Positions 23,901 to 44,900 of a DNA stretch of 64,000 nt are shown here, piece after piece. The DNA is from Adineta vaga (lineage: Eukaryota > Animalia > Rotifera), in NCBI GenBank assembly GCA_021613535.1, contig CP075494.1:13516001-13580000 (forward strand). The letters run 5' to 3'. The notes under the pieces are model-generated. The model searched no databases. It was not told the DNA's origin and saw only the letters and a list, made by a program, of their open reading frames with translations. The translations under genes and the position numbers were made by a program. The stretch's first letter is position 1, and every line of letters begins with the position of its first letter.

Positions 23901-26900
23901 AAATTTAACGACAACTGCAGATAATTCCAGATATGGTAATATAGAGTTTCTCTAAAAACTTTTTTTTCTAGTTGAAAGATAAATATCAGTTCATCCAGTA
24001 AATGTGTTGACACTCAATTGATTTTTGTACATCACAAAAGAATAGATTAACATCATGTATTGAAGATAAAACATCTCTTATATAATTGTCTGTTGTAGTT
24101 GTAATCAATCTATTCTTCATTTGGATTTGTTGCCTTTATCAGATGAAAGATAATATTATTATTCTCTTCTCATTTTTAATTTCTTTTTCTTATATATTAA
24201 ATCCATATCTAATAGATTCAAATAATAGAAAATTAATTAGATCTCTTATCAATATTTAAGTATAATGGTTATTCTTATTTTCATATAAATTTGCCCTTAT
24301 TGACATCATCCATGAAGGAAAAAGACAGTAATATCTATCAGCAAAATTTCCTCTTACTATTCTTTCCTAGAAAAAAAAAATTCTTCGTCTATATGGATTC
24401 TTTTGTTCCACGCCTACTTTCCTTCTATGTTGTGTACGTATATACATATCGGTCATCATCAACATCATCCTTCGCATCTCTACGATATCAACATTAACTA
24501 AAAGAAAGGAAAGAAGAAAAATCGAAGCAAACATGGATATCCAAAAAAAAAAGAAGAAAGAATGTTTTTTCTCAACCTATGACTTTGCAATACTTCTCAG
24601 AAGGATAACGTTCTGTTTCTTTCTCCCAAATTCTCGTCGTTGTTGATTTGTCTTCCTATGATTATATCATCTGTACAGCTGCCTACCAATGACCAAGTAA
24701 ACATGAAGTTTGTCTATCTGTTTTTCAAGCAACATTTGTAGTATTGGGAGATAATAGACAACATTTTCTTTTTCTGTATCTTGCTGCGTTCTATATTCAT
24801 CATCAACATCATACTTAGCTATACAGTCTTGGTATTTGTTTTGCTTATTCATCGAAGTATCGTTTTTCAAATCAAATGGCATTCAATGACGAACGTATAC
24901 CAAAATTTGTTCATGTCGATGATGAAAATAGATTTCAAAGTAATGATTTAATTTTATTTGGTTTCGAACAAGAATTAAAATCGATTACTGTACGTCATGG
25001 TGAATCAGCACGATTTGAAGCAAAAATACATTTAAAATCAACATCATCCAATATTCAAATTGATCGATCTATATTAATAATTGAATGGCGTTTAAATGAT
25101 ATACCATTAATTAATGATGAGAAATCACGATATCGTTTTGATTCAATACCAGAAGAAAATCTCTATTGGATGGACATTCGACAATGTGAACAAGAAGATG
25201 AAGGAGTTTATACGATCTATATTAGTTATGATCATGGAAAATTTCATGAGGAATCGAGCGCTTATCTCTTTGTTGATAGTGAGTTTATATGAAGAAAAAA
25301 TGTTTTTCATTTAGAAAGAATAGATTGATCTGTTGTTAATTAATTGATTTTCAATGTATATAATTGAAAACGATCAATTATTTATCCATTATGTTTGTTA
25401 TTCTTTTTTTTTTCTTTCTTCGTTCTGAGAATCCAAGAAAGATAGAAAATTCTTATAATTATAATTGATTAAATCATTGATATTTTGTTGTGTTTTTTTA
25501 TAGGCTTTATTACTGAAAAGGAGGAGCAACCTGATCAATTAAGCCAACAAGGATTAACTGCCGATGATACGTGGTTTTCTGCCACATCACTTGATCGTTT
25601 TATTCCACCAACAATCACACGACCTCTTCTATCAACTTATCGATGTCATTCGAAAACGAAATTACAACTTCAAGTGGAATATTTTTCTCCATCTATTCAG
25701 TGTCATTGTAGATGGCAAGTACAATATTTAAATGATACTACACCAGGACCCGTACAGAACGGCTCAATAATTAATACAAATTATTCATCAACATTAACAA
25801 TTCATTCAATGACGCCTGAATTACAAGGTACATACACATTTTATTTGGAAAATGTCTATGGAAATGCAATGACACAAACCCATGTTATTGTTGATAAGGA
25901 TTCTAGTGATGACGAATTAGGTAAAGTAGAAAAACAACAATATATCATTTTTCTTCTTCTTTTTTTCCTATCAATAACATTTTAGAATACCAAGAAGTAC
26001 CTGAAGAACCACTATTGAAAAAGCAATATGTTGATGACGATAGTCATCTTCCAATTCATGTTCTTAGTGGAGATACAGAAAATCTTATTATTCATACTGA
26101 ACGTACTCCACAAGTAATGAATTTATTTGTACTATATTTGATTTTTGATTATTATCTATGTAGATTACACGAGATATATCAAGCGAACAAAATTTACAAC
26201 TTCAACCTGGTGACAAAATTGAAATTGAAGATATTAGTATGACAGTTCAATTTAATAAACAACAACAACAACAATTAAAATCTGTAAGTAAAGTGTTAAT
26301 TGAATATGTCAGAAGATTATATAGTAGTCTCCAATAATCTCATGTTTTCTTTTTAAGGAATATGACCAAAATCAATTCCAATTACCAACGACATCAACCA
26401 TTACTGACTCTGTTCAGAGAATTATTCGGGAGGATATTCCGCAAACAACTACAACTACTATTACAACTGAAGAAACAGATATGTTTTCTTTACCATCATC
26501 TACTACATTAGATCAAACTTTGAGTGGTGTTGCACAGTGGTCTCAATTATTTTCGGATAATAATATGCTTCCGTCAATTACAACAGCATTACTACCTAAT
26601 CGTGCCTCACAAATTTCGAATTTATCTCCATCCGCTAATGTATATGAAGAGGAACAATATGTTATGCATCCTGTTGACCAACGTTTAGCAATCAACTCTT
26701 CTGGAACATCTAGTAAAGCTAATACTATTCAACAAGCAACTGTTGAATCAGGTGTACAATCATTCGATGAAGCAGCTCAAGAAACATCTGTCAATATTAG
26801 TCATATACGTCAACAACAATCTGGAGGTGTTAAACGCACAGCTATATCAATTTCGCAACCGAGCACTACGACAGATTTTCCGCTATTAGATGAAACTGCT

Positions 26901-29900
26901 ATTCAACTCGATCAGATTCATCGTCCTACTGCAACAGAATCTGTGCAATATATTGCACCAATCGATATAATTCCATCAACTGGTACCATTGTTAGAACAA
27001 CTACTGCTTTAGGTGAAGAAGAATTGCCCCAAGAAACTTCTATGAATATTAGTCAACTTCGTCAACCAATCGCACAAAGCTTCCCTACACAACAGCAAGT
27101 ACCTATTAATCTTCAACCACGTATTGGTTCTATTCGTATGACTACATCAACGCTTAGTCAAGAAGAACTATCTCATGAAACAGCAATTCGTATCAATCAG
27201 ATACGACAACAGTATCCACAGGCGACCAAACAACAAGTTTTATCTATACTTCAACAATCTTTTGCCGTTACCGAACCGATACTTGAAGAAGCTGCTCTTC
27301 ATCTCGACCAAATTCAACGTACTGAAGCACTGAAAAATGTTCAATACAAATCATCTACTGATATACAGCCATCGATTGCAACCTTCCACACTACACAATC
27401 GGCATTAGGAGCCGACGAAGCATCTCAAGAAACATCACTCAATATATCTCAAATACGACAACCAACTGCTAAACAATTACCAACACACGAAACTCCCAAA
27501 CATCAAGCGTCACTTGTCATACAACCCAGTATTGCAACCGATGCGCCAATTTTTGATCAAACTTCCCTAATAGCTAATCAAACACAACAACCTGTCAAAT
27601 CACAAACAGTTCAAGATCAAGTGTCCGCTCAACTTCCAAATACGGCAGCTACGATTTTCAAAACAGCCTCCGCTTTCGCACAAGACGATTTTCCACAAGA
27701 TACTGCAGTTAACGTTAATCAATTACGTCAACCAGCTGCACAAACTATACCTGCATTAGAACAACCACTAGTAACAGATGAACGTCCAACAGCCACCGGT
27801 ACTATCATGAAGACAACATCAGCTCTAGGTCAAGACGATCTGCCACAAGATACTGCAGTTAACGTTAATCAATTACGACAACCAACTGCACAAACTATTC
27901 CTGCAGTACCTTCAGTCGAACAACCAAGTGTGGTTGTACCAATTCAGCGAATTGAACAACCACTAGTAACAGAAGAACGTCAAACAACCACCGGTACTAT
28001 CATGAAGACAACATCAGCTCTAGGTCAAGAAGATCTCCCACAAGATACTGCAGTTAACGTTAATCAATTACGACAACCAACTGCACAAACTATTCCTGCA
28101 GTACCTTCAGTCGAACAACCAAGTGTGGTTGTACCAATTCAGCGAATTGAACAACCACTAGTAACAGAAGAACGTCAAACAACCACCGGTACTATCATGA
28201 AGACAACATCAGCTCTAGGTCAAGAAGATCTCCCACAAGATACTGCAGTTAACGTTAATCAATTACGACAACCAACTGCACAAACTATTCCTGCAGTACC
28301 TTCAGTCGAAGAACCAGGTGTTGCTTTACCAGTTCAGCGAATTGAACAACCGGTATTAACAGATGAACGTCAAACAGCCACCGGTACTATCATGAAGACA
28401 ACATCAGCTCTAGGTCAAGACGATCTGCCACAAGATACTGCAGTTAACGTTAATCAATTACGACAACCAACTGCACAAACTATTCCTGCAGTACCTTCAG
28501 TCGAACAACCAGGTGTTGCTGTACCAGTTCAGCGAATTGAACAACCGGTATTAACAGATGAACGTCAAACAGCCACCGGTACTATCATGAAGACAACATC
28601 AGCTCTAGGTCAAGACGATCTGCCACAAGATACTGCAGTTAACGTTAATCAATTACGACAACCAACTGCACAAACTATTCCTGCAGTACCTTCAGTCGAA
28701 CAACCAGGTGTTGCTGTACCAGTTCAGCGAATTGAACAACCGGTATTAACAGATGAACGTCAAACAGCCACCGGTACTATCATGAAGACAACATCAGCCT
28801 TGAGTCAGGAAGACCTACCACAAGATACTGCAGTTAATGTTAATCAATTACGAGAACCAACTGCACAAACTATTCCTGCAGTACCTTCAGTCGAACAACC
28901 AAGTGTGGTTGTACCAATTCAACGAATTGAACAACCAGTAGTAACAGATGAACGTCAAACAACCACCGGTACCATCATGAAGACAACATCAGCTTTAGGC
29001 CAGGAAGACCTACCACAAGATACTGCAGTTAATGTTAATCAATTACGACAACCAACTGCACAAACTATACCTGCAGTACCTTCAGTCGAACAACCAGGTG
29101 TTGCTGTACCAGTTCAGCGAATTGAACAACCGATATTAACAGATGAACGTCAAACAGCCACCGGTACTATCATGAAGACAACATCAGCCTTGAGTCAGGA
29201 AGACCTACCACAAGATACTGCAGTTAATGTTAATCAATTACGACAACCAACTGCACAAACTATTCCTGCAGTACCTTCAGTCGAACAACCAGGTGTTGCT
29301 GTACCAGTTCAGCGAATTGAACAACCGATATTAACAGATGAACGTCAAACAGCCACCGGTACTATCATGAAGACAACATCAGCCTTGAGTCAGGAAGACC
29401 TACCACAAGATACTGCAGTTAATGTTAATCAATTACGACAACCAACTGCACAAACTATTCCTGCAGTACCTTCAGTCGAACAACCAGGTGTTGCTGTACC
29501 AGTTCAGCGAATTGAACAACCGGTATTAACAGATGAACGTCAAACAGCCACCGGTACCATCATGAATACGTCATCAGCTCTAGGTCAAGAAGATCTACCA
29601 CAAGATACCGCAGTTAACCTCAGTCAATTACGACAACCAACTGCACAAACTATTCCTGCAGTACCTTCAGTCGAACAACCAAGTGTGGTTGTACCAATTC
29701 AACGAATTGAACAACCAGTAGTAACAGATGAACGTCAAACAACCACCGGTACCATCATGAAGACAACATCAGCTTTAGGCCAGGAAGACCTACCACAAGA
29801 TACTGCAGTTAATGTTAATCAATTACGACAACCAACTGCACAAACTATTCCTGCAGTACCTTCAGTCGAACAACCAGGTGTTGCTGTACCAGTTCAGCGA

Positions 29901-32900
29901 ATTGAACAACCGATATTAACAGATGAACGTCAAACAGCCACCGGTACTATCATGAAGACAACATCAGCCTTGAGTCAGGAAGACCTACCACAAGATACTG
30001 CAGTTAATGTTAATCAATTACGACAACCAACTGCACAAACTATTCCTGCAGTACCTTCAGTCGAACAACCAGGTGTTGCTGTACCAGTTCAGCGAATTGA
30101 ACAACCGATATTAACAGATGAACGTCAAACAGCCACCGGTACTATCATGAAGACAACATCAGCCTTGAGTCAGGAAGACCTACCACAAGATACTGCAGTT
30201 AATGTTAATCAATTACGACAACCAACTGCACAAACTATTCCTGCAGTACCTTCAGTCGAACAACCAGGTGTTGCTGTACCAGTTCAGCGAATTGAACAAC
30301 CGGTATTAACAGATGAACGTCAAACAGCCACCGGTACCATCATGAATACGTCATCAGCTCTAGGTCAAGAAGATCTACCACAAGATACCGCAGTTAACCT
30401 CAGTCAATTACGACAACCAACTGCACAAACTATTCCTGCAGTACCTTCAGTCGAACAACCAAGTGTGGTTGTACCAATTCAACGAATTGAACAACCAGTA
30501 GTAACAGATGAACGTCAAACAACCACCGGTACCATCATGAAGACAACATCAGCTTTAGGCCAGGAAGACCTACCACAAGATACTGCAGTTAATGTTAATC
30601 AATTACGACAACCAACTGCACAAACTATTCCTGCAGTACCTTCAGTCGAACAACCAGGTGTTGCTGTACCAGTTCAGCGAATTGAACAACCGATATTAAC
30701 AGATGAACGTCAAACAGCCACCGGTACTATCATGAAGACAACATCAGCCTTGAGTCAGGAAGACCTACCACAAGATACTGCAGTTAATGTTAATCAATTA
30801 CGACAACCAACTGCACAAACTATTCCTGCAGTACCTTCAGTCGAACAACCAGGTGTTGCTGTACCAGTTCAGCGAATTGAACAACCGGTATTAACAGATG
30901 AACGTCAAACAGCCACCGGTACCATCATGAATACGTCATCAGCTCTAGGTCAAGAAGATCTACCACAAGATACCGCAGTTAACCTCAGTCAATTACGACA
31001 ACCAACTGCACAAACTATTCCTGCAGTACCTTCAGTCGAACAACCAAGTGTGGTTGTACCAATTCAACGAATTGAACAACCAGTAGTAACAGATGAACGT
31101 CAAACAACCACCGGTACCATCATGAAGACAACATCAGCTTTAGGCCAGGAAGACCTACCACAAGATACTGCAGTTAATGTTAATCAATTACGACAACCAA
31201 CTGCACAAACTATTCCTGCAGTACCTTCAGTCGAACAACCAGGTGTTGCTGTACCAGTTCAGCGAATTGAACAACCGGTATTAACAGATGAACGTCAAAC
31301 AGCCACCGGTACCATCATGAATACGTCATCAGCTCTAGGTCAAGAAGATCTACCACAAGATACCGCAGTTAACCTCAGTCAATTACGACAACCAACTGCA
31401 CAAACTATTCCTGCAGTACCTTCAGTCGAACAACCAGGTGTTGCTGTACCAGTTCAGCGAATTGAACAACCGATATTAACAGATGAACGTCAAACAACCA
31501 CCGGTACCATCATGAAGACAACATCAGCTTTAGGCCAGGAAGACCTACCACAAGATACTGCAGTTAATGTTAATCAATTACGACAACCAACTGCACAAAC
31601 TATTCCTGCAGTACCTTCAGTCGAACAACCAGGTGTTGCTGTACCAGTTCAGCGAATTGAACAACCGATATTAACAGATGAACGTCAAACAGCCACCGGT
31701 ACTATCATGAAGACAACATCAGCCTTGAGTCAGGAAGACCTACCACAAGATACTGCAGTTAATGTTAATCAATTACGACAACCAACTGCACAAACTATTC
31801 CTGCAGTACCTTCAGTCGAACAACCAAGTGTGGTTGTACCAATTCAACGAATTGAACAACCAGTAGTAACAGATGAACGTCAAACAACCACCGGTACCAT
31901 CATGAAGACAACATCAGCTTTAGGCCAGGAAGACCTACCACAAGATACTGCAGTTAATGTTAATCAATTACGACAACCAACTGCACAAACTATACCTGCA
32001 GTACCTTCAGTCGAACAACCAGGTGTTGCTGTACCAGTTCAGCGAATTGAACAACCGGTATTAACAGATGAACGTCAAACAGCCACCGGTACCATCATGA
32101 ATACGTCATCAGCTCTAGGTCAAGAAGATCTACCACAAGATACCGCAGTTAACCTCAGTCAATTACGACAACCAACTGCACAAACTATTCCTGCAGTACC
32201 TTCAGTCGAACAACCAAGTGTGGTTGTACCAATTCAACGAATTGAACAACCAGTAGTAACAGAAGAACGTCAAACAACCACCGGTACCATCATGAAGACG
32301 TCATCAGCTCTAGGTCAAGAAGATCTACCACAAGATACTGCAGTTAATGTTAATCATTTACGTCAACCAACTTCAAAAATGATTACTGGAGTATCTAGAA
32401 TTGAACAGCAAGGGTCAGAAGTTGAACAGCCAGCCATTACTGTTGATATGCCAGTTAGGGAAGAAACACGTAATGTTATCGAGGGAAATCGTGCTCTGTT
32501 CGTAGAAGAAGCATCCCCGTATAGTACTACTACGGATACTGAACGAACAACCGGCGTAACTTCTTCTTCATGGGATGTGACTAGTTCAAGTTATGATCAG
32601 GATCAGCATACACAAGTCGTACAATCATCTGAATACGAAGTATCAACTGATTTGAAAGAATCATCAGGGTTTTTACATAGCAATGTGTCAGCATTAGCAA
32701 GTGACGTTGAATATGATATCAATATATCCACTAGCATTGAGGGCTACCAGCAACAACACGGATACAAATCGCAACGACCAACTGTTGTTCAAAGTCCTAC
32801 ATCACTGGTGGAAAGCGAAGAACATACTCAGTCTACTACAGTAAATCAACGTCGACAAATGGTTCCATCTGTTCAAAAAGAAGAAGAAAGAAAAGAAAAA

Positions 32901-35900
32901 CAAATAGAAGATGAAGAAATGTCACAGAAAGAGAAATCGATTTCACCTGAACCGTCGATGAATATTGACGAAGTTATTGAGACAATTCGTTTAGAAGATG
33001 AATTACTGGAACCTAAAAAGCCATTTATTGCAGATATTCCAGTACTAACCGAGGAAGAGACGTCTCTATCTATTGTATCAGTTGTTGATGTTTTGCCTAC
33101 AATCAATGAAATACCTCAAACTATCAGTGAAGAAATATCAATGCGAATTAATCAACTCGAAACTGTTCCTTCCGATCAAGTTGTCGATGAAGAACTGCCA
33201 GCAAACGGTACGGTTCCAACTTCATCAACGCAAAATCAATCAGATCAAGTTTCATCGGGATCAGAAGGCACACTAATGTCTACTACTATAGAGAAAGAAT
33301 CATCAACACCTTTAGTACAGAACATTGAAGAAGCGTCTGCGATCAAAATAAGCAAAGTGGTTGATTATATCGAAATACCAGCATCAAAAACGGATTCGAA
33401 TGAGCACAAACCTGAAGCAATAATTATTACTGAAGAAATAAAACCAGCTGATAAGATTACGCCAGCCGAAGGTATGTTCGTTAAACGTATTAGTTTTCTT
33501 CTGACAAAAATAAATAATTTTTACATATGTTTAGACGTCTCAAAACAAATTACAGATTCATCTGAAATTAGACGTTCAACTGCCGAATTAAAACCAGAAA
33601 CATTTCAACAAATACAGAGTATGATATTAAATGACTTCATTTTTATTATGAAAAACAAACACACTCTCTTATTTTAGCTCCTGACACGATTGACAAACTT
33701 ACTCCGCAATCTGCAACCCAACAAATCGAAGGACTTTCCGAAACTACTACCGATATATTATCAGTACCTATCGAATCAAACTTGTTACCCTTAGCCACAA
33801 TGCCAGATGACACATTCGTTGCAGATAATCAAGTTCAACCTGAGAAAATTGTACAAGAAGTTCTTACGGCAGCCTTTGAACATGCTGATGCTCCTCATGT
33901 TGAAAAAATTTTAGAAACTATATCAACACTTACGTCAGCTACACCAGAAACAACGGTCGACACTTATATTCAATCAAAAGATACTGCTACTGAAGAAACT
34001 ATCGAAAAAACCCAATTGATTGAAACGGCCACCGCAATTCTCGAATCTAATCTAGCCGAAAAAACAATTAATATGACATCACATATACAAGAAACCAGTC
34101 AACTGATTCAACCAACAGTTACACTCGCTCAAGCTGAAAAATTACAACATGAAGCGGCAGTCGAGTATAAAAGTGATCAACTTTCGTCATCAACAATTGA
34201 TTTTACTTTAAGCTCTGAAAACATTACCGAACAACCACCAACATCGACTGCACATACGGTAGAGCAACCGACTGAAACACAGCCAACAATCACATTTGAA
34301 CAAACCGTACACTCCGACCTAGCTCAACCAGCCAACACAGCTGAACAATCATTAGAATCAACTCAAAAATTCACATCAACATTCTTCACATCTTCAACCG
34401 AACAACCGTCCGTCACAAACACTCAGCAACAATCAAAAACATCAGAAACTATACCTGACACGACACCTATCCCTACTCTACAACAATCTCAACAAGTACT
34501 CTTACAGCAAAAACAACAAGAGTCTATTCAAACTGAACAGCATCAGACAGAATTGATATCCGATATACCACTAGACAAAGAACGACAAATCTCACCAATA
34601 CAGCAAACCAAAAAACAAGAACATAATACCGACACAGACAAACTAGAACCGGTGCAACAAGTTCCGCAGTCAAAAGAACTTCCGCGAGAATCACAACTCA
34701 ATGAAGCAAAACTCCCAGAACAAAACAAACACGTTGCTGAAGCCAAGAATTCCCAACCGGAGAAACCTACAGCCGAAGCACAAACAGTTCAACCAGAAAA
34801 ACAAATAGCTCAAGCTCAACAGGTCACACCAGCCACGGAAACTCCTACGGTTGAACACCAAAAACAAACAACTGAAACTGAGAATCTTCAAAAAGAGAAT
34901 CAAGTTGCCCATGCTCAAAATATCCCACAAGAAAATCCAACAGCCACAATACAACAATTTCAACAAGAAAAACCAACAGCTGAACCTCAGAAGCACGGAC
35001 AAGAGAAACAAACAGAAGAAGCACACAGACTTCCAGAAGAGAAAAACGTTACGGAAACTCGAACAGCGGCAGAAGAGAAACAAACATCGCAAGCTCAACA
35101 AGTTCAGCAACAAAATCAAGCCATTACATCAGGCATCACCGAACAAGAGAAACAAGTAACTGCAGATAAAAAAGCCGAAGAAGCTAATTTGGTCTTCCAA
35201 GCTGCACAAGAAAAGAAAGCTGAACAAGAGAAACAAGTAGCCGAAGCCAAACAAGCAGAAGAACAAAAGAAGGAAGCTGAAGCTCAGAAGGTGGAAGAAG
35301 CTAAACTTGCTAAACAAGCTGAACAAGAGAAACAAGTAGCCGAAGCCAAACAAGCAGAAGCAAAGAAGGCAGCTGAAGCTCAGAAGGTGGAAGAAGCTAA
35401 ACTTGCTAAACAAGCTGAACAAGAGACACAAGTAGCCGAAGCCAAACAAGCAGAAGAACAAAAGAAGGCAGCTGAAGCTAAACTCGCAACTGAATCGAAG
35501 AAAGCTGAACAAGAGAAACAAGTAACTTCAGATAAAAAAGCCGAAGAAGCTAATCAGGTCTTACAAGCTGCACAAGAAAAGAAAGCTGACCAAGAGAAGC
35601 ACGTAATCGAAGCCAAACAAGCAGAAGAACAAAAGAAGGCAGCTGAAGCTATGAAGGTGGAGGAAGCTAAACTTGCTAAACAAGCTGAACAAGAAAAGAA
35701 AGCAGAAGAAGCCAAACAAGCTGAACAAGAAAAGAAAGCACAAGAAGCCAAACAAGCCGCTGAAGAAAAGAAGGCTGCGGATGCTAAGAAAGCTGAAGAA
35801 GCTAAACTGGCCTTACAAGCTGAACAAGAAAAGAAAGCAGAAGAAGCCAAACAAGCTGCCGAAGCGAAGAAAGCTGAACAAGAAAAGAAAGCGCAAGAAG

Positions 35901-38900
35901 CCAAACAAGCCGCTGAAGAAAAGAAGGCTGCGGATGCTAAGAAAGCTGAAGAAGCTAATCAGGTCTTACAAGCTGCACAAGAAAAGAAAGCTGAACAAGA
36001 GAAGCACGTAATCGAAGCCAAACAAGCAGAAGAACAAAAGAAGGCAGCTGAAGCTATGAAGGTGGAGGAAGCTAAACTTGCTAAACAAGCTGAACAAGAA
36101 AAGAAAGCACAGGAAGCCAAAGAAGCGGCTGAAGCCAAGAAAGCTGAACAAGAAAAGAAAGCGCAAGAAGCCAAACAAGCCGCTGAAGAAAAGAAGGCAG
36201 CGGATGCTAAAAAGGCTGAAGAAGCTAAACTGGCCTTACAAGCTGAACAAGAAAATAAAGCACAGGAAGCCAAAGAAGCGGCTGAAGCCAAGAAAGCTGA
36301 ACAAGAAAAGAAAGCGCAAGAAGCCAAACAAGCCGCTGAAGAAAAGAAGGCTGCGGATGCTAAGAAAGCTGAAGAAGCTAATCAGGTCTTACAAGCTGCA
36401 CAAGAAAAGAAAGCTGAACAAGAGAAGCACGTAATCGAAGCCAAACAAGCAGAAGAACAAAAGAAGGCAGCTGAAGCTATGAAGGTGGAGGAAGCTAAAC
36501 TTGCTAAACAAGCTGAACAAGAAAAGAAAGCACAGGAAGCCAAAGAAGCGGCTGAAGCCAAGAAAGCTGAACAAGAAAAGAAAGCGCAAGAAGCCAAACA
36601 AGCCGCTGAAGAAAAGAAGGCAGCGGATGCTAAAAAGGCTGAAGAAGCTAAACTGGCCTTACAAGCTGAACAAGAAAATAAAGCACAGGAAGCCAAAGAA
36701 GCGGCTGAAGCCAAGAAAGCTGAACAAGAAAAGAAAGCGCAAGAAGCCAAACAAGCCGCTGAAGAAAAGAAGGCAGCGGATGCTAAGAAAGCTGAAGAAG
36801 CTAAACTGGCCTTACAAGCTGAACAAGAAAAGAAAGCAGAAGAAGCCAAACAAGCTGCCGAAGAAAAGAAGGCAGCGGATGCTAAAAAGGCTGAAGAAGC
36901 TAAACTGGCCTTACAAGCTGAACAAGAAAAGAAAGCAGAAGAAGCCAAACAAGCTGCCGAAGAAAAGAAGGCAGCGGATGCTAAAAAGGCTGAAGAAGCT
37001 AAACTGGCCTTACAAGCTGAACAAGAAAAGAAATCAGAAGAAGCCAAACAAGCTGCCGAAGAAAAGAAGGCAGCGGATGCTAAAAAGGCTGAAGAAGCTA
37101 AACTGGCCTTACAAGCTGAACAAGAAAAGAAAGCAGAAGAAGCCAAACAAGCTGCCGAAGAAAAGAAGGCAGCGGATGCTAAAAAGGCTGAAGAAGCTAA
37201 ACTGGCCTTACAAGCTGAACAAGAAAAGAAAGCAGAAGAAGCCAAACAAGCTGCCGAAGCGAAGAAAGCTGAACAAGAAAAGAAAGCACAGGAAGCCAAA
37301 CAAGCCGCTGAAGAAAAGAAGGCAGCGGATGCTAAAAAGGCTGAAGAAGGTAAACTGGCCTTACAAGCTGAACAAGAAAAGAAAGCAGAAGAAGCCAAAC
37401 AAGCTGCCGAAGCGAAGAAAGCTGAACAAGAAAAGAAAGCACAGGAAGCCAAACAAGCCGCTGAAGAAAAGAAGGCTGCGGATGCTAAGAAAGCTGAAGA
37501 AGCTAAACTGGCCTTACAAGCTGAACAAGAAAAGAAAGCAGAAGAAGCCAAACAAGCTGCCGAAGCGAAGAAAGCTGAGCAAGAGAAGAAAGCGCAAGAA
37601 GCCAAAGAAGCGGCTGAAGCCAAGAAAGCTGAACAAGAAAAGAAAGCGCAAGAAGCTAAACAAGCCGCCGAAGAAAAGATGGCAGCGGATGCTAAAAAAG
37701 CTGAAGAAGCTAAACTGGCCTTACAAGCTGAAAAAGAAAAGAAAGCACAGGAAGCCAAAGAAGCGGCTGAAGCCAAGAAAGCTGAACAAGAAAAGAAAGC
37801 GCAAGAAGCCAAACAAGCCGCTGAAGAAAAGAAGGCTGCGGATGCTAAGAAAGCTGAAGAAGCTAAACTGGCCTTACAAGCTGAACAAGAAAAGAAAGCA
37901 GAAGAAGCCAAACAAACTGCAGAAGCCAAGAAAGCTGAACTTGAGAAGAAAGCGCAAGAAGCCAAACAAGCTGCCGAAGAAAAGAAGGCTGCGGATGCTA
38001 AGAAAGCTGAAGAAGCTAAACTGGCCTTACAAGCTGAACAAGAAAAGAAAGCAGAAGAAGCCAAACAAACTGCAGAAGCCAAGAAAGCTGAACTTGAGAA
38101 GAAAGCGCAAGAAGCCAAACAAGCCGATGAAGAAAAGAAGGCAGCGGATGCTAAAAAGGCTGAAGAAGCTAAACTGGCCTTACAAGCTGAACAAGAAAAG
38201 AAAGCACAGGAAGCCAAAGAAGCGGCTGAAGCCAAGAAAGCTGAACAAGAAAAGAAAGCGCAAGAAGCCAAACAAGCCGCTGAAGAAAAGAAGGCTGCGG
38301 ATGCTAAGAAAGCTGAAGAAGCTAAACTGGCCTTACAAGCTGAACAAGAAAAGAAAGCAGAAGAAGCCAAACAAGCTGCCGAAGCGAAGAAAGCTGAGCA
38401 AGAGAAGAAAGCGCAAGAAGCCAAAGAAGCGGCTGAAGCCAAGAAAGCTGAACAAGAAAAGAAAGCGCAAGAAGCCAAACAAGCCGATGAAGAAAAGAAG
38501 GCAGCGGATGCTAAAAAGGCTGAAGAAGCTAAACTGGCCTTACAAGCTGAACAAGAAAAGAAAGCACAGGAAGCCAAAGAAGCGGCTGAAGCCAAGAAAG
38601 CTGAACAAGAAAAGAAAGCGCAAGAAGCCAAACAAGCCGCTGAAGAAAAGAAGGCTGCGGATGCTAAGAAAGCTGAAGAAGCTAAACTGGCCTTACAAGC
38701 TGAACAAGAAAAGAAAGCAGAAGAAGCCAAACAAACTGCAGAAGCCAAGAAAGCTGAACTTGAGAAGAAAGCGCAAGAAGCCAAACAAGCTGCCGAAGAA
38801 AAGAAGGCAGCGGATGCTAAAAAGGCTGAAGAAGCTAAACTGGCCTTACAAGCTGAACAAGAAAAGAAAGCGCAAGAAGCCAAACAAGCCGCTGAAGAAA

Positions 38901-41900
38901 AGAAGGCAGCGGATGCTAAAAAGGCTGAAGAAGCTAAACTGGCCTTACAAGCTGAACAAGAAAAGAAAGCAGAAGAAGCCAAACAAGCTGCCGAAGCCAA
39001 GAAAGCTGAGCAAGAGAAGAAAGCGCAAGAAGCCAAAGAAGCGGCCGAAGCGAAGAAAGCTGAACTTGAGAGGAAAGCACAGGAAGCCAAAGAAGCGGCT
39101 GAAGAAAAGAAGGCAGCGGATGCTAAAAAGGCTGAAGAAGCTAAACTGGCCTTACAAGCTGAAAAAGACAAGAAAGCCGAAGAAGCCAAACAAGCTGCCG
39201 AAGCGAAGAAAGCTGAACTTGAGAAGAAAGCGCAAGAAGCCAAAGAAGCGGCTGAAGCCAAGAAAGCTGAACAAGAAAAGAAAGCGCAAGAAGCCAAACA
39301 AGCCGCTGAAGAAAAGAAGGTAGCGGATGCTAAAAAGGCTGAAGAAGCTAAACTGGCCTTACAAGCTGAACAAGAAAAGAAAGCAGAAGAAGCCAAACAA
39401 GCGGCTGAAGCCAAGAAAGCTGAGCAAGAGAAGAAAGCGCAAGAAGCCAAAGAAGCGGCCGAAGCGAAGAAAGCTGAACAAGAAAAGAAAGCACAGGAAG
39501 CCAAAGAAGCGGCTGAAGCCAAGAAAGCTGAACAAGAAAAGAAAGCGCAAGAAGCCAAACAAGCCGCTGAAGAAAAGAAGGCTGCGGATGCTAAGAAAGC
39601 TGAAGAAGCTAAACTGGCCTTACAAGCTGAACAAGAAAAGAAAGCACAGGAAGCCAAAGAAGCGGCTGAAGCCAAGAAAGCTGAACAAGAAAAGAAAGCG
39701 CAAGAAGCCAAACAAGCCGCTGAAGAAAAGAAGGCAGCGGATGCTAAAAAGGCTGAAGAAGCTAAACTGGCCTTACAAGCTGAACAAGAAAAGAAAGCCG
39801 AAGAAGCCAAACAAGCTGCCGAAGCGAAGAAAGCTGAACTTGAGAAGAAAGCGCAAGAAGCCAAAGAAGCGGCTGAAGCCAAGAAAGCTGAGCAAGAGAA
39901 GAAAGCGCAAGAAGCCAAAGAAGCGGCCGAAGCGAAGAAAGCTGAACAAGAAAAGAAAGCACAGGAAGCCAAAGAAGCGGCTGAAGCCAAGAAAGCTGAA
40001 CAAGAAAAGAAAGCGCAAGAAGCCAAACAAGCCGCTGAAGAAAAGAAGGCTGCGGATGCTAAGAAAGCTGAAGAAGCTAAACTGGCCTTACAAGCTGAAC
40101 AAGAAAAGAAAGCACAGGAAGCCAAAGAAGCGGCTGAAGCCAAGAAAGCTGAACAAGAAAAGAAAGCGCAAGAAGCCAAACAAGCCGCTGAAGAAAAGAA
40201 GGCAGCGGATGCTAAAAAGGCTGAAGAAGCTAAACTGGCCTTACAAGCTGAACAAGAAAAGAAAGCCGAAGAAGCCAAACAAGCTGCCGAAGCGAAGAAA
40301 GCTGAACTTGAGAAGAAAGCGCAAGAAGCCAAAGAAGCGGCTGAAGCCAAGAAAGCTGAACAAGAGAAGAAAGCGCAAGAAGCCAAAGAAGCGGCTGAAG
40401 CGAAGAAAGCTGAACTTGAGAGGAAAGCACAGGAAGCCAAAGAAGCGGCTGAAGAAAAGAAGGCAGCGGATGCTAAAAAGGCTGAAGAAGCTAAACTGGC
40501 CTTACAAGCTGAACAAGAAAAGAAAGCCGAAGAAGCCAAACAAGCTGCCGAAGCGAAGAAAGCTGAACTTGAGAAGAAAGCGCAAGAAGCCAAAGAAGCG
40601 GCTGAAGCCAAGAAAGCTGAACAAGAGAAGAAAGCGCAAGAAGCCAAAGAAGCGGCTGAAGCGAAGAAAGCTGAACTTGAGAGGAAAGCACAGGAAGCCA
40701 AAGAAGCGGCTGAAGAAAAGAAGGCAGCGGATGCTAAAAAGGCTGAAGAAGCTAAACTGGCCTTACAAGCTGAAAAAGACAAGAAAGCCGAAGAAGCCAA
40801 ACAAGCTGCCGAAGCGAAGAAAGCTGAACTTGAGAAGAAAGCCCAAGAAGCCAAAGAAGCGGCTGAAGCCAAGAAAGCTGAACAAGAAAAGAAAGCACAA
40901 GAAGCCAAACAAGCCGCTGAAGAAAAGAAGGCAGCGGATGCTAAAAAGGCTGAAGAAGCTAAACTGGCCTTACAAGCTGAACAAGAAAAGAAAGCAGAAG
41001 AAGCCAAACAAGCGGCTGAAGCGAAGAAAGCTGAACAAGAAAAGAAAGCACAAGAAGCCAAAGAAGCGGCTGAAGCCAAGAAAGCTGAACTTGAGAAGAA
41101 AGCACAAGAAGCCAAACAAGCCGCTGAAGAGAAGAAGGCAGCGGATGCTAAAAAGGCTCAAGAAGCTAAACTGGCCTTACAAGCTGAACAAGAAAAGAAA
41201 GCAGAAGAAGCCAAAGAAGCGGCTGAAGCGAAGAAAGCTGAACTTGAGAGGAAAGCACAGGAAGCCAAAGAAGCGGCTGAAGCCAAGAAAGCTGAACAAG
41301 AAAAGAAAGCGCAAGAAGCTAAACAAGCCGCCGAAGAAAAGAAGGCAGCGGATGCTAAAAAGGCTGAAGAAGCTAAACTGGCCTTACAAGCTGAAAAAGA
41401 CAAGAAAGCAGAAGAAGCCAAACAAGCTGCCGAAGCGAAGAAAGCTGAACAAGAAAAGAAAGCACAAGAAGCCAAAGAAGCGGCTGAAGCCAAGAAAGCT
41501 GAACAAGAAAAGAAAGCAGAAGAAGCCAAACAAGCTGCCGAAGCGAAGAAAGCTGAACAAGAAAAGAAAGCACAAGAAGCCAAAGAAGCGGCTGAAGCCA
41601 AGAAAGCTGAACAAGAAAAGAAAGCACAAGAAGCCAAAGAAGCGGCTGAAGCCAAGCAAGCTGAACTTGAGAAGAAAGCACAAGAAGCTAAACAAGCCGC
41701 TGAAGCCAAGAAAGCTGAACTTGAAAAGAAAGCACAAGAAGCGAAACAAGCAGCTGAAGAAAAGAAGGCAGCGGATGCTAAAAAGGCTGAAGAAGCTAAA
41801 CTGGCTTTACAAGCTGAAAAAGACAAGAAGGCACAGGAAGCCAAAGAAGCGGCTGAAGCCAAGAAAGCTGAACAAGAAAAGAAAGCACAAGAAGCCAAAG

Positions 41901-44900
41901 AAGCGGTTGAAGCCAAGAAAGCTGAACTTGAGAAGAAAGCACAAGAAGCCAAACAAGCCGCTGAAGAAAAGAAGGCAGCGGATGCTAAAAAAGTTGAAGA
42001 AGCTAAACTGGCCTTACAAGCTGAAAAAGACAAGAAAGCACAGGAAGCCAAAGAAGCGGCTGAAGCCAAGAAAGCTGAACAAGAAAAGAAAGCACAAGTA
42101 GCGAAACAAGCGGCTGAAGAAAAGAAGGCTGCTGAAGTTAAAAAGGCCGAAGAAGCTAAACTTGCTGCCGAAGCAAAGAAGGTGGAAGAAGAGAATATGG
42201 CACTCGAAGCTAAGAAAGTCACCGTAGAAAAGAAAACACTCGAGTTGAAGAAGTTGGAAGTGAAGAATAAAGTTGATGAAACGGTGAAAGATGCTGGCGA
42301 ACAGATTTTGGGAGCGGTTCAAATGGCTGGTGATGAAACGAAAGGAAGTTTGAAAAAGACGCCCCAAATTGAAGCTGTCAAAGCAGCGGAAGCTCTTGAT
42401 GTCGCGGCTCCTGAATCTCCTAGTACGGTAGCTGAGCAAGACTTTTTGCGTCCCAATTTTACTTTACGTTTGAAACCAACGACGGCTGTGAATGAAGGTG
42501 ATAAGTTGAAGCTCGAAGTGCGTTTCATCGCTCAACCTGAACCAACAGTAACAGATTTTGTTTTAGAATTTTTTGTCTGAATATGCTCTGACTTTGTTTT
42601 TGCTAGATTACATGGTATTTTAAAACAGAAGTATTGAAGCCAGCAGCTAATGTACATTTTGATCAGCTGCGTGATGTGCATATGTTTTCATCAATATTAA
42701 CAATTGATAGAGTTACTGCCGACTTTGATGGAAAATTCAAAATTGTGCTTAAAAATGATTTAGGTGAAGCGGTCAGTAGTACACAAGTTAATGTCAAACG
42801 TTGTAAGTAAAATTGAAATGTTTGTAGAGCTAGAGAATATTTGTGTAACGGTTTTTAGCATCTATGGCTGTACAACTTCAAGCACCACCGAAGAAAACAA
42901 GTACTGTCGAAGCGACTGTACCGTCACCAAATGAGTAAGTGTTATTAACCATTTTAGTTCTTTTTTTCGACCGGATTTAAGGGAAAAAAATTTCATTCTT
43001 ATCGATCTAAGTACTAACATACGGTTGTTATATTTATTTTCTCTTCGTTATATCTGTAGTGTTTTAAAGCGATTTTTATGAGTTGTTTTTGTTTGATTAT
43101 CATTTATTGTTGAAATGATGTTGATTAAAACATAAAGAATATTATATGATGAAATGACAACAACGAAGAAAGTACGTATGAATAGACATATTGACCTTGC
43201 TACAGTATGACGTTCATACAACTTAAATGATTATTTTTCTTTGCTAATTTATCGTATATACAATGCGTATTGTCTATATATTGATTAACTGTTCCATCCG
43301 TTTTTCTCTTTTACTCTCTCTCTCTCTGTCTCTTTCTCTCTTTATTTTCTATTTTTGGCTGGCGGTTATATCGACAGTAATTGCGCGAGAATAACTTCTA
43401 GACAACGATTTATGTTAGTAAGAGTGCACGATGAATGGTCCTAACAAATGGACAAAAATAACAATGTCACCCTTGTGTCATAGAAAGGATGAGAAGAAAG
43501 AGCAAAAGCTACGTAATCCTATCAAGAATGTATAACAAGAGGCATCGTACAACTCTGATAACGACTCAATGAGAACAAAAAGAGAAAAGAAGAAGAATTA
43601 ATCGCATATGGAAAAATCTGTGTGTACATAAAAGGGGTAAAGAAAAGAAGATGATAGAAATAGACATAGAATGGTCGTTCTTTTCTTACGTCTAGCATGT
43701 AAACTTTGTTCATAAACTATCATCAAATTTTTTCCAGTTTTTTTTCTACTTGAACTAATGAAGTTTTCTACTTAGAATATGATTAATGATTTGTCTGATA
43801 TCCTTGAACAGTACCATTGAAGAAGTGTGTTGTAGTGACAATGATGAATCAATCTATCATATCAGCATGTCTCAATGTAATAATAACCTTTTTCTTTTAT
43901 CTATCAATAGAGTAACATTAACGACGGCGAGTGGTAACGAAACTGATACAATGACAAGCGAGCTTGCTAGTGCTTCTCCACGACGTCGTTCAAGCACATT
44001 AGTTATACCAGAAGGTAAACCTTCCTTTGCTCATCCACTCGAGAGTGAACTATTAATCAATGAAGATGAACAACTTATGTATGTATCATTTAAACTTATC
44101 TATTTCACTAATTCTTCTATATCTTCTAGTCTCGAATGTATTATTACTGGTAATCCAATACCAGACTTAATTTGGTTCTTCAATGATAGAAAAATACTTA
44201 CTAATAATGATTATCAAAGAAAGACTGAAACATTAAATCCACATACTGTCCGTCAGCAATTGATTATTGATGCTAAACAGAAAAAAATAGGTGTATACAA
44301 AGCACAGGCACAGAATACATATGGTCATACTGTTAGTACATGTCATGTGAAAAAATCTGCGCATACAATTGATCAGAAAAAGAAAGCTGCATTTGAAGAA
44401 ACGGAATTACAAGCACCTGAACAACCTATTCAACGACGTCGTTCGAGTGTGACAGCACCAACTAAACTTGAACCGACACAAAAGCCAGTTATTGTGCAAG
44501 GTTTATCTACATTACAAATTGATTTAAGTTCACCATGTGCATTAACATGTAAATCGAAATATGATACTGAACATCAATGGATCAAAGATGGTCAAATTCT
44601 TACAGATATAACATCAGCTGATGGAAATATTTTTGCGAATTCTGAACGTTCTACTGATGGTAATATTCATATATTTAATATAAAACAATTTAAACAAGAA
44701 AATAGTGGCAATTATGAATTAATCTTAAAAAATAAACTTGGACAAATCATTTCTCAAGGACGTTTAGAAATGAAAGGTATACCGCCAACATTTACGCTTG
44801 AACCAACATCAGCAGCCGTTGTTAAAGGCAAAATAGCAGAATTCAATTGTCGTGTAGATGGAAGTCCAAAACCTGAGGTACATATTTCAATTGAATTTAA

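What the first reader, a model, noticed from the sequence alone, without database searches (positions are those of the whole stretch)
33678..42547. A ~2,300-residue proline-free Ala/Glu/Lys hexad array sits where titins carry PEVK: a candidate alpha-helical spring
Seen: one 8,870-bp exon. From ~35140 to ~42200 the protein has no Pro, almost no Gly and no aromatics. It is built from 6-residue A-x-E/D-x-K-x modules, with a 3-residue ALQ insert that shifts the register every 33/51/69 aa. Known: titin-family elasticity normally comes from Pro-rich PEVK, while E/K/A sequences with i,i+3/4 salt bridges form single alpha-helices (SAH, TolA-II-like), and similar compositions in LEA proteins fold on drying. 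Inference: this is a non-PEVK elastic element, about 350 nm if fully helical at 0.15 nm/residue, working by helix-coil transition. It might stiffen on dehydration if the host is desiccation-tolerant.
Basis: partly seen in the sequence, partly recalled or inferred. Interest (0 to 1): 0.85.

Follow-up and report, generated by a model that had tools for sequence, protein, structure and literature searches.

The report
Proline-free helical spring in rotifer titin
A giant titin-like muscle gene of a bdelloid rotifer carries a 2,355-residue, proline-free Ala/Glu/Lys repeat that is predicted to form a very long charged single helix, and in related rotifers the same slot holds a proline-rich PEVK-like spring instead, so nature appears to have swapped two kinds of molecular spring.

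Summary
Window 35135-42199 (+) encodes 2,355 residues: A 32%, K 25%, E 24%, Q 11%, no Pro, one Gly, one Phe. They form A-x-[E/Q/D]-[A/E]-K-x hexads, with 32 three-residue ALQ inserts.

The exon belongs to an Ig/Fn3-rich, kinase-less gene resembling sallimus/I-connectin. The genome is probably Adineta vaga.

Opposite charges are strongly enriched at i+3 and i+4, and like charges are depleted. There is no heptad hydrophobic period. AlphaFold2 predicts helix with pLDDT about 80. I therefore read it as an Ala-rich SAH-like spacer and helix-coil spring. This is a prediction, not a demonstration.

New here:
- The paralogue on contig 2 has the same exon at only 347 aa, with no array.
- Orthologues carry Pro-free A/E/K arrays in A. 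ricciae, Rotaria socialis and R. magnacalcarata.
[quoted passage not shown] The desiccation idea is not supported. Pro-free arrays occur in both desiccating and non-desiccating species.

Transcription is shown for the 5' unique part of the exon only. This is a new variant of a known kind of element. The scan had noted this stretch only as this same finding.

The parts
26481..33471 (+). Upstream exon of the same gene. It holds about 24 copies of a 65-aa T/Q/V/P-rich repeat (27759-32393). This is context: a second, Pro-containing low-complexity segment in series with the array.
   Evidence: Open frame. Tandem Repeats Finder gives period 195 nt x 23.8 copies at 93% identity. Composition is T14 Q14 V12 P11 %. 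A spliced contig of run X7 joins 33471 to 33535.
33472..33534 (+). 63-nt GT..AG intron
   Evidence: Joint 33469>33533 (cut +2) in a contig of run X7.
33535..33618 (+). 84-nt mini-exon that links the two giant exons in frame
   Evidence: The X7 contig continues into it. The donor GT at 33619-20 and the frame continuity were read from the sequence. The 3' end is inferred.
33619..33677 (+). 59-nt intron (inferred)
   Evidence: GT at 33619-20 and AG at 33676-77. Splicing here joins the frames. No read evidence was obtained.
33678..42547 (+). The 8,870-nt exon of the finding
   Evidence: Open frame 33635-42580. AG/GT borders. The annotated A. ricciae orthologue P0018 runs from array through tail into the Ig domain in the same way.
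33678..35134 (+). Non-repetitive T/Q/E/P-rich lead-in. It has two anchors conserved in paralogue and orthologues (33761-33808 and 34121-34165). It shifts gradually from Pro-containing QPEK-type motifs to Pro-free sequence.
   Evidence: BLASTP against the contig-2 paralogue exon, E 2e-15. Hits P0001-P0006. Composition gradient. X7 contigs lie at 33741-34160 and 34580-34803.
35135..42199 (+). Ala/Glu/Lys/Gln hexad array of 2,355 aa: about 375 hexads and 32 ALQ inserts. The first ~560 nt are more degenerate; from ~35700 on the array is homogenised.
   Evidence: AlphaFold2 on 38135-39034 gives all helix.
42200..42403 (+). Non-repeat tail between the array and the Ig domain
   Evidence: Translation. 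It is conserved with P0007, P0018, P0033, P0034, P0037 and P0039.
42404..42547 (+). Last 48 codons of the exon: the tail end and the first ~30 residues of an I-set Ig domain (DFLRPNF...FIAQPEPT)
   Evidence: 44/48 identical to A. ricciae P0018. BLASTP to the contig-2 paralogue, E 9e-14.
42548..42606 (+). 59-nt phase-0 intron that splits the Ig domain
   Evidence: GT..AG read. The orthologue proteins read straight through.
42607..42802 (+). Next exon: the rest of that I-set domain
   Evidence: Pfam I-set positions 32-90, E 1e-4, 22.7 bits, just under the 23.7-bit cut-off. 48-52/65 identical to the orthologues.

Best explanation
The array is a lineage-specific, recently expanded low-complexity module in one of two ancient duplicate (ohnologous) titin-like genes of a bdelloid rotifer. 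The gene resembles sallimus/I-connectin.

It occupies the elastic-segment slot between a few N-terminal Ig domains and the long tandem-Ig region.

Its sequence is close to ideal for a monomeric, Ala-rich, charge-stabilised single alpha-helix. Only helix-favouring residues occur, there is no Pro, and almost every charged side chain has an opposite partner 3 or 4 residues away. Ala sits in a 6-residue register, which spreads it around the helix instead of forming a seam.

I infer three mechanical regimes:
- At rest it is a semi-flexible rod of about 350 nm contour. The rms end-to-end distance is about 100 nm if the persistence length is about 15 nm.
- Under load it first straightens, then unwinds non-cooperatively at a low, nearly constant force, up to about 0.9 um.
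- On release it rewinds.

It acts in series with the Pro-containing 65-aa-repeat segment just upstream and with the Ig chain. Functionally it is the counterpart of the PEVK-like array that orthologues in other Rotaria carry at the same place.

Shown: the sequence features, the gene context, the orthology, the swap between Pro-free and Pro-rich arrays, and transcription of the exon's 5' part.

Inferred: helicity, monomeric state, spring behaviour and muscle location.
For: Composition and hexad register.

Charge pattern:
- Opposite charges at i+3: 592 against 309 expected, z +20.
- Opposite charges at i+4: 411, z +7.
- Like charges at i+3 / i+4: 81 / 35 against 309, z -16 / -20.
- 90% of charged residues have a partner.
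- No hydrophobic power at periods 3.5 or 7.

The apolar helical moment per ALQ-delimited unit is only 0.05-0.09. Its azimuth steps by about +60 degrees at each ALQ, and the net over the whole array is 0.008.

AlphaFold2 on 300 aa gives helices 2-136 and 144-299, mean pLDDT 79.6.

Gene context: I-set Ig exons on both sides, an Fn3 run at the 3' end, and no kinase seen. The best non-rotifer hits are arthropod titin/sls.

Constraint across species:
- A. ricciae P0018 has 42 hexads in perfect A-x-E/D-x-K-K register. Opposite/like charges are 105/0 at i+3 and 72/1 at i+4, although the individual hexads differ from those in the window.
- R. socialis and R. magnacalcarata have Pro-free A/E/K arrays.
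- The environmental contig L017 has an 8-residue A/E/K/Q unit.

Same slot as PEVK-like arrays in R. sordida and Silwood-1. Orthology is supported by a tree with 98/98 support.

SAH domains behave as constant-force springs that unfold below 30 pN (PMC4183817).

A bacterial parallel: the force-transducing domain II of TolA/TonB is either alpha-helical or Pro-rich depending on taxon (PMC12204202).

Transcription: the spliced X7 contig, and X7 contigs in 33741-34803.
Against: No experiment exists. AlphaFold2 tends to draw helices for such sequences, pTM was 0.28, and the model has a break at one ALQ site.

The array is less charged than natural SAHs. It is 51% charged, or 62% counting Q/N, against about 80% reported (PMC5812594). 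Ala is 32% and Arg is almost absent.

Designed Ala-rich E/K heptads (AEEAKKA) dimerised, and AAEAAKA aggregated (PMC5347031).

K>E(i+4) pairs (317) outnumber E>K (94). Which orientation stabilises more is disputed in the papers read.

Transcription through the repeat core is not shown. Only runs of guessed RNA type hold 100%-identical contigs there.

Long exact internal repeats, up to 493 nt, show very recent expansion, which is also compatible with weak constraint.
Confidence: 0.55

Rival explanations
1. Disordered polyampholyte spring. The array is mostly random coil or only transiently helical in vivo. It works as an ordinary entropic spring like PEVK, merely built from other residues.
For: It is a low-complexity tandem repeat in the slot where orthologues have a Pro-rich, presumably disordered array. 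The charge fraction is below that of natural SAHs. The AlphaFold2 pTM is low.
Against: Pro is absent from 2,442 residues and Gly is near absent. All abundant residues are strong helix formers. The i+3/i+4 charge pairing is far beyond what composition alone gives and is kept in A. ricciae. Short Ala-based E/K peptides are classic monomeric helices (as cited in PMC5347031).
Confidence: 0.2
2. Self-associating helices. The Ala-rich helices pack on each other, either as antiparallel hairpins within one chain or as Alacoil-like or straight 18/5 bundles between neighbouring molecules. The array would then be a stiff rod or a cross-linker rather than a single-helix spring.
For: AEEAKKA repeats dimerise and AAEAAKA aggregates (PMC5347031). 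The array has 32% Ala and an 18-residue (5-turn) period. The AlphaFold2 model has two long helices with a break at an ALQ site. C. elegans titin is reported to have coiled-coil regions (title cited in PMC12198301).
Against: There is no 3.5/7 period and Leu is only 3.9%. The hexad register spreads Ala round the helix. The small apolar moment is rotated by 60 degrees at each ALQ and cancels over the array.
Confidence: 0.12
3. Neutral runaway expansion. This is a slippage-prone coding microsatellite-like repeat, tolerated in a linker. Its length and composition have no specific mechanical meaning.
For: Exact internal duplicates up to 493 nt, and very few DNA variants per hexad type. The unit length differs between species: 6, 8 or about 10 residues. 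The contig-2 paralogue and its orthologues do without any array.
Against: The frame stays open over 7 kb. The helix-compatible charge pattern and the lack of Pro are kept in four species despite sequence turnover. Every C5-type orthologue sampled has some long E/K-rich array at this slot.
Confidence: 0.08
4. LEA-like, desiccation-responsive element that folds or stiffens on drying.
For: The composition resembles group 3 LEA proteins, and the host genus tolerates desiccation (PMC7943196).
Against: No LEA family match at E<=1. The periods are 6/18 residues, not 11. It is embedded in a giant Ig protein. Pro-free arrays are present in the non-desiccating R. socialis and R. magnacalcarata, and are replaced by Pro-rich arrays in the desiccating R. 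sordida and Silwood-1.
Confidence: 0.03
5. Assembly artefact or untranslated sequence.
For: Highly repetitive DNA. Short-read assemblies of relatives break inside the array. Transcription of the core is not shown directly.
Against: Conserved coding sequence flanks both ends in frame. Independent assemblies of four other species contain arrays at the same place. Older DNA runs hold 53-59% of the sampled words. Contigs 100% identical to the window lie inside the array.
Confidence: 0.02

Closest known systems
PEVK segment of vertebrate titin and PEVK-like segments of invertebrate titins (Drosophila Sallimus, crayfish I-connectin)
   Same: It is a tandem low-complexity, E/K-rich segment inserted between Ig arrays of a titin-family protein. 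[quoted passage not shown]
   Different: It has no Pro, 1% Val and 32% Ala, and is predicted helical rather than coil or polyproline-II. Neither the window's array nor the Rotaria arrays match any Pfam family for PEVK motifs. What I say about Sls and I-connectin is from my own knowledge and from PMC12198301. The primary papers were not held.
Single alpha-helix (SAH, ER/K) domains of myosin-6/-10, caldesmon and drebrin
   Same: A dense i/i+3 and i/i+4 network of opposite charges, no hydrophobic seam, and a helical prediction. Such domains are shown to be constant-force springs below 30 pN (PMC4183817). Caldesmon is a muscle protein whose SAH is rich in Ala (mentioned in PMC5347031).
   Different: It is about ten times longer than the characterised SAHs I know of (about 100-200 residues; my knowledge). 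It is 51% charged instead of about 80% charged+N/Q. It has almost no Arg. It is built from near-identical tandem hexads rather than irregular sequence.
TolA domain II and other bacterial or fungal A-x-x-A-K-K hexad arrays
   Same: The same hexads (AAEAKK, AADAKK types) occur in Lactococcus hypothetical proteins P0008 and P0010, in a TolA-like JGI protein P0014, and in a Malassezia protein P0019. TolA domain II is an alpha-helical force-transmitting spacer. Across taxa it alternates with Pro-rich versions (PMC12204202), as happens here between rotifer species.
   Different: These are convergent low complexity, not homology. Those arrays are about 90-340 aa in the hits examined. They sit in the periplasm or on the cell surface, not in muscle.
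Coiled-coil and tandem-repeat regions of C. elegans TTN-1 (Flaherty et al. 2002)
   Same: It is a precedent for predicted helical, non-PEVK segments in an invertebrate titin. The title is cited in PMC12198301.
   Different: Here there is no heptad signal. Details of TTN-1 could not be checked because the paper is not held.
Group 3 LEA proteins
   Same: A/E/K-rich composition that can form helix.
   Different: There is no 11-residue period and no Pfam LEA match. The array is part of a giant Ig protein. Its distribution does not follow desiccation tolerance.

Membership tests
Titin family, I-band type (Sallimus / I-connectin / Ce-titin-like) | Long tandem arrays of I-set Ig domains | tested here: met
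   I-set hits in nearly every ORF from 20.8 kb to ~92 kb in window coordinates.
Titin family, I-band type (Sallimus / I-connectin / Ce-titin-like) | Fn3 domains towards the C-terminus | tested here: met
   Mixed Ig/Fn3 and then an Fn3 run in L022-L023, i.e. window coordinates ~90-98 kb.
Titin family, I-band type (Sallimus / I-connectin / Ce-titin-like) | Unique low-complexity elastic segment(s) inserted between Ig arrays | tested here: met
   The 65-aa repeat exon and the A/E/K array lie between Ig exons.
Titin family, I-band type (Sallimus / I-connectin / Ce-titin-like) | Closest named relatives outside the phylum are titin/sls | tested here: met
   After the rotifer orthologues come a Cherax protein, 'titin' of Dinoponera and 'similar to sls' of Cotesia, but obscurins come too. 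The subfamily assignment is therefore approximate.
Titin family, A-band/kinase type (vertebrate titin, twitchin, projectin) | Ser/Thr kinase domain near the C-terminus | tested here: not met
   No kinase hit in the ORFs scanned up to the gene's apparent end at ~98.1 kb. Small exons were not scanned.
SAH (single alpha-helix) domain | Dense opposite-charge pairs at i+3/i+4, with like-charge pairs avoided | tested here: met
   z +20/+7 for opposite charges and -16/-20 for like charges. 90% of charged residues are paired.
SAH (single alpha-helix) domain | No heptad hydrophobic seam (distinguishes it from a coiled coil) | tested here: met
   No power at periods 3.5/7. The net apolar moment is 0.008.
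SAH (single alpha-helix) domain | About 80% charged plus N/Q residues, with an E/K/R mix | tested here: not met
   51% charged, 62% with Q/N, Ala 32%, Arg 0.2%. The benchmark is from PMC5812594.
SAH (single alpha-helix) domain | Monomeric, highly helical in solution, with non-cooperative melting | not testable with these tools
   Only an AlphaFold2 prediction exists. The dimer prediction job gave no answer.
PEVK segment | Pro, Glu, Val and Lys make up most residues, in PPAK-type ~28-residue modules | tested here: not met
   P 0%, V 1%. No Pfam match other than a low-complexity family.
Canonical coiled coil | Heptad a/d hydrophobic positions | tested here: not met
   Hydrophobic period 3.0, none at 3.5/7. 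L+V+I+M is about 5%.
Group 3 LEA (Pfam LEA_4) | 11-residue repeats matching the family profile | tested here: not met
   No hit at E<=1. The periods are 6/18.

The most novel reading that the evidence does not exclude
The array is a real single alpha-helix of about 350 nm, roughly ten times longer than any characterised one. It serves as the main low-force spring of a titin-like protein. Bdelloid rotifers have repeatedly exchanged this helix-coil spring and a Pro-rich entropic spring at one orthologous slot. This gives a natural swap experiment on how titin elasticity can be built.
Probability: 0.35. Interest if true: 0.8.

Novelty: new variant of a known kind. Interest (0 to 1): 0.62.

Why it matters
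Titin-family springs are thought of as Pro-rich disordered chains plus Ig chains. SAH domains are known as short constant-force springs in motors.

A 2,355-residue SAH-like array inside a titin-like protein would join these two fields. It alternates with a PEVK-like array in orthologues of sister species, and it is absent from the ancient duplicate in the same genome.

This offers three natural comparisons for testing how spring chemistry sets passive muscle mechanics:
- array against no array;
- helical against Pro-rich;
- unit lengths of 6, 8 and about 10 residues.

It also gives a very simple sequence rule that may keep Ala-rich charged helices monomeric: a hexad register with a 3-residue phase shift. 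That could be useful for designed rigid linkers.

No paper in the searchable library mentions PEVK together with rotifers.

Tried and rejected
- Complex prediction on two copies of a 153-aa piece gave 'no answer' (score 0.00, controls not run). It is not used as evidence either way.
- Foldseek against the PDB with the 300-aa model found no match.
- A PDB sequence search found no match.
- ESM Atlas returned only unnamed clusters at 0.85-0.86, below the useful range.
- Pfam gave only Plasmodium_HRP, a low-complexity Ala-rich family and not a meaningful relation. No PEVK/PPAK or LEA family matched the window's array or the Rotaria arrays.
- The exhaustive HMMER search with the unique lead-in gave only six short fragments. 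These were useful as anchors but not for function.
- The repeat finder on the array gave hundreds of overlapping families and was uninformative. It was replaced by my own exact-repeat scan.
- Comparing the Pro-containing lead-in (34535-35284) with the Silwood-1 PEVK-like array gave only a weak match, E 0.037. This hints at, but does not show, common origin of the two array types.
- Fukuzawa 2001 and Forbes 2010 are not held. Searches for TTN-1 coiled-coil/PEVT and for crayfish SEK found nothing.
- I considered that the genome might be C. elegans (six pieces, about 100 Mb). I rejected this because the nearest named proteins are Adineta and Rotaria.
- The long antisense ORF 36382-41115 and the two alternative + frames are by-products of the repeat, not genes.
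Exons were handled one by one by reference.

Full report
**1. What is there**

The + strand frame is open from 33635 to 42580.

From 35135 to 42199 the exon encodes 2,355 residues. Their composition is A 31.7, K 25.1, E 24.1, Q 10.9, L 3.9 and D 1.9 %. There is no Pro, Trp, Tyr or Cys, and only one Gly and one Phe. The longest Pro-free run is 2,442 residues.

When the sequence is cut after each ALQ, the pieces divide exactly into hexads. Position 1 is Ala (96%), position 3 is E/Q/D, position 4 is A/E and position 5 is Lys (94%). The commonest hexads are AEQEKK, AAEAKK, AQEAKE, AADAKK, AAEEKK and AEEAKL.

There are 32 ALQ inserts. The units between them are 33, 51, 69, 87, 105 or 141 residues, always of the form 6n+3. 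Tandem Repeats Finder reports periods of 18, 54, 153, 207 and 306 nt.

The array is young at the DNA level. Exact internal duplicates reach 493 nt, and each hexad type has only 1-6 DNA spellings.

**2. The gene**

Nearly every ORF on the + strand from about 20.8 kb to the window's end is made of I-set Ig domains. I fetched 80 kb more of the same contig. The gene runs on to about 98.1 kb in window coordinates, through more Ig, then mixed Ig/Fn3, and ends in a run of Fn3. No kinase domain appeared in the ORFs scanned.

The last 48 codons of the exon begin an Ig domain. After a 59-nt phase-0 intron, the next exon matches I-set positions 32-90.

Directly upstream lies a 7-kb exon with about 24 copies of a 65-aa T/Q/V/P-rich repeat. 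A contig of run X7 shows a 63-nt GT..AG intron, 33472-33534. From the sequence I then infer an 84-nt mini-exon and a 59-nt intron that join the two giant exons in frame.

Outside rotifers, the best matches of the orthologue are arthropod titin/sls and obscurins. By architecture the gene is nearest to the kinase-less I-band type of invertebrate titins: Sallimus, I-connectin and D-titin (PMC12198301, and my own knowledge).

**3. Which organism**

The assembly has 100.8 Mb in six contigs. The nearest named proteins are from Adineta ricciae and Rotaria species. The older sequencing runs date from 2013.

This fits the chromosome-level assembly of Adineta vaga. In that assembly, chromosomes 1, 2 and 3 are homoeologous to 4, 5 and 6 (PMC8494291). 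The species name is my inference, not a tool result.

**4. Is it transcribed?**

Run X7 holds a spliced contig across 33471|33535, so it contains RNA. It also holds contigs at 33741-34160 and 34580-34803, inside the exon's unique 5' part.

Runs X1 and X2 hold contigs 100% identical to the window inside the array, for example at 35746-36244 and 38312-38397. Their RNA status is only a guess.

Annotated gene models of A. ricciae and four Rotaria species include their arrays in the coding sequence. So transcription of the exon is shown, but transcription through the whole array is not.

**5. Structure prediction from sequence**

The charge pattern is far from random:

| Pair type | Observed | Expected | z |
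|---|---|---|---|
| Opposite charges, i+3 | 592 | 309 | +20 |
| Opposite charges, i+4 | 411 | 309 | +7 |
| Like charges, i+3 | 81 | 309 | -16 |
| Like charges, i+4 | 35 | 309 | -20 |

Ninety per cent of charged residues have an opposite partner at +-3 or +-4. The charge spectrum peaks near periods 6 and 3. The hydrophobic spectrum peaks at 3.0 and has nothing at 3.5 or 7.

Six residues turn an ideal helix by 240 degrees, so the invariant Ala is spread evenly round the helix. The remaining apolar moment per unit is 0.05-0.09. Every unit length is congruent to 15 mod 18, so each ALQ turns this weak face by about +60 degrees. Over the whole array it cancels to 0.008.

This differs from the heptad-phased AEEAKKA design, which formed an Ala seam and dimerised (PMC5347031).

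AlphaFold2 on 300 residues gives two helices, 2-136 and 144-299, with mean pLDDT 79.6 but pTM 0.28. The break falls just after one ALQ, while four other ALQ sites stay helical.

There are caveats. The array is less charged than natural SAHs: 51%, or 62% with Q/N, against about 80% (PMC5812594). It has 32% Ala and almost no Arg. The dimer prediction gave no answer.

**6. Relatives: the most informative result**

(a) *The paralogue.* Contig 2 of the same genome, the homoeologue of contig 5, carries a paralogous Ig-rich gene. Its equivalent exon is 347 aa. It aligns with both ends of the window's exon (E 2e-15 and 9e-14) and has no array. Its upstream exon also lacks the 65-aa repeats.

(b) *The orthologues.* Searches returned named proteins whose sequence just before the same Ig domain could be read:

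| Species (protein) | Array seen | Pro | Type |
|---|---|---|---|
| A. ricciae (P0018, partial) | >=252 aa, 42 hexads in perfect A-x-E/D-x-K-K register | 0% | Pro-free A/E/K |
| R. socialis (P0033, partial) | >=85 aa, other unit length | 0% | Pro-free A/E/K/D |
| R. magnacalcarata (P0037, partial) | >=170 aa, other unit length | 0% | Pro-free A/E/K/D |
| R. sordida (P0034, partial) | >=215 aa, period 24 aa | 14% | PEVK-like |
| Rotaria sp. Silwood-1 (P0039) | ~700 aa, residues ~2001-2700, period 24 aa | 15% | PEVK-like |

The two PEVK-like arrays have E+D 22-23, K+R 23 and V 7-8 %. An environmental contig, L017, has a tail 40/47 identical to the window's. There the tail is preceded by at least 2.8 kb of an 8-residue A/E/K/Q/L unit. 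Its frame is broken in many places, possibly by long-read errors.

(c) *The tree.* A maximum-likelihood tree of the next large exon splits the sequences into two groups with 98/98 support. It has ten rows, non-rotifer hits were left out, and the midpoint root is for drawing only.
- One group holds the contig-2 copy, A. ricciae P0036, a JGI protein and Silwood-2 P0038. P0038 has no array.
- The other holds the window with A. ricciae P0018, and beside them (R. socialis + R. magnacalcarata) with (R. sordida + Silwood-1).

Every sampled member of the window's orthology group therefore has a long E/K-rich array at this slot. The array is Pro-free in three lineages and Pro-rich in one.

On this small sample, a Pro-free ancestor needs one change and a Pro-rich ancestor needs two. 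Arrays turn over fast, so I do not press this. The Pro-containing lead-in at 34685-35134 weakly resembles the Rotaria unit (E 0.037).

**7. Desiccation**

PMC7943196 lists the phenotypes:
- Desiccating: A. vaga, A. ricciae, R. sordida and Silwood-1/-2.
- Non-desiccating: R. magnacalcarata, R. socialis and R. macrura.

Pro-free arrays occur in both classes. Within Rotaria it is the desiccators that have the Pro-rich type. There is also no LEA match and no 11-residue period. The desiccation idea therefore has no support. The sample amounts to only about three independent lineages.

**8. Mechanism proposed (inference)**

As a helix the array has a contour length of 353 nm. Fully extended it would reach about 895 nm.

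With a persistence length of about 15 nm (my recollection of measurements on ER/K helices), the relaxed end-to-end distance would be about 100 nm. A coil of the same residues with a 1-nm persistence length would give about 40 nm.

I propose three regimes in series with the neighbouring Pro-containing repeat and the Ig chain:
- straightening of a semi-flexible rod at very low force;
- non-cooperative unwinding at a low, roughly constant force, as measured for the myosin-10 SAH (<30 pN, PMC4183817);
- then stiffening, when the extended chain and the Ig domains bear the load.

Swapping it for a PEVK-like coil would shorten the resting span and replace the plateau with a rising entropic force. TolA and TonB offer a bacterial parallel, where a force-transmitting spacer is helical in some taxa and Pro-rich in others (PMC12204202).

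**9. Comparison with the known, and novelty**

The array is not a PEVK segment, a canonical coiled coil or an LEA protein; the defining features were tested and not met. It fits SAH domains on charge pattern and lack of a seam, but not on charge density. It is about tenfold longer than the SAHs I know.

The same hexads occur convergently in short bacterial and fungal arrays. No paper in the library mentions PEVK together with rotifers, and nothing on rotifer titin was found.

I class it as a new variant of a known kind: a titin-family spring segment built on an SAH-like design. The added finding is that Pro-free and Pro-rich arrays interchange at one orthologous slot.

Noticed in passing
window 26481-33471 (repeat 27759-32393): Exon with about 24 copies of a 65-aa T/Q/V/P-rich repeat at 93% identity. 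The contig-2 paralogue lacks the repeats, and Rotaria sp. Silwood-1 has only a few degenerate, longer copies. AlphaFold2 on three units gives low confidence (pLDDT 49), with one beta-hairpin drawn per unit.
   Followed up: partly
window 33472-33677: The gap between the two giant exons is not a single intron. A spliced contig shows a 63-nt intron, followed by an 84-nt mini-exon (33535-33618) and an inferred 59-nt intron.
   Followed up: partly
G000:C2:3883507-3884493 (-), L016:3499-4542: An ohnologous titin-like gene on the homoeologous contig has short versions of both giant exons (347 and about 213 aa). It has intact long Ig ORFs downstream. This is a natural array-less control in the same animal.
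   Followed up: partly
L017:1-2900 (ENA ERZ25073694 ctg45118): An environmental orthologue has an 8-residue A/E/K/Q/L unit (24-nt period, about 115 copies). Its reading frame jumps among all three frames. I cannot tell whether this reflects sequencing errors or a decaying gene.
   Followed up: no
window 36382-41115 (-), 36501-39323 (+), 39327-42101 (+): Very long stop-free ORFs lie on the opposite strand and in the two other + frames. They are by-products of the codon-poor repeat, not genes.
   Followed up: yes
window 64001-80000 (L020-L021): Several near-identical exon blocks of about 600 aa of Ig domains repeat downstream.
   Followed up: no
window 17036-18115 (+): A single-exon ORF matches Pfam FAM199X (E 1e-17). 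It lies just upstream of the titin-like gene.
   Followed up: no
window 33154-34803: Contigs of run X7 differ from the window at 2-4% of positions in the unique part of the exon. Runs X1 and X2 are identical to the window there. This points to a different strain or haplotype.
   Followed up: no
P0008, P0010 (Lactococcus), P0019 (Malassezia), P0027 (Plasmodium MAEBL): Unrelated proteins carry arrays of 90-340 aa built from the same A-x-x-A-K-K type hexads or related E/K/A repeats. This simple motif recurs by convergence.
   Followed up: partly
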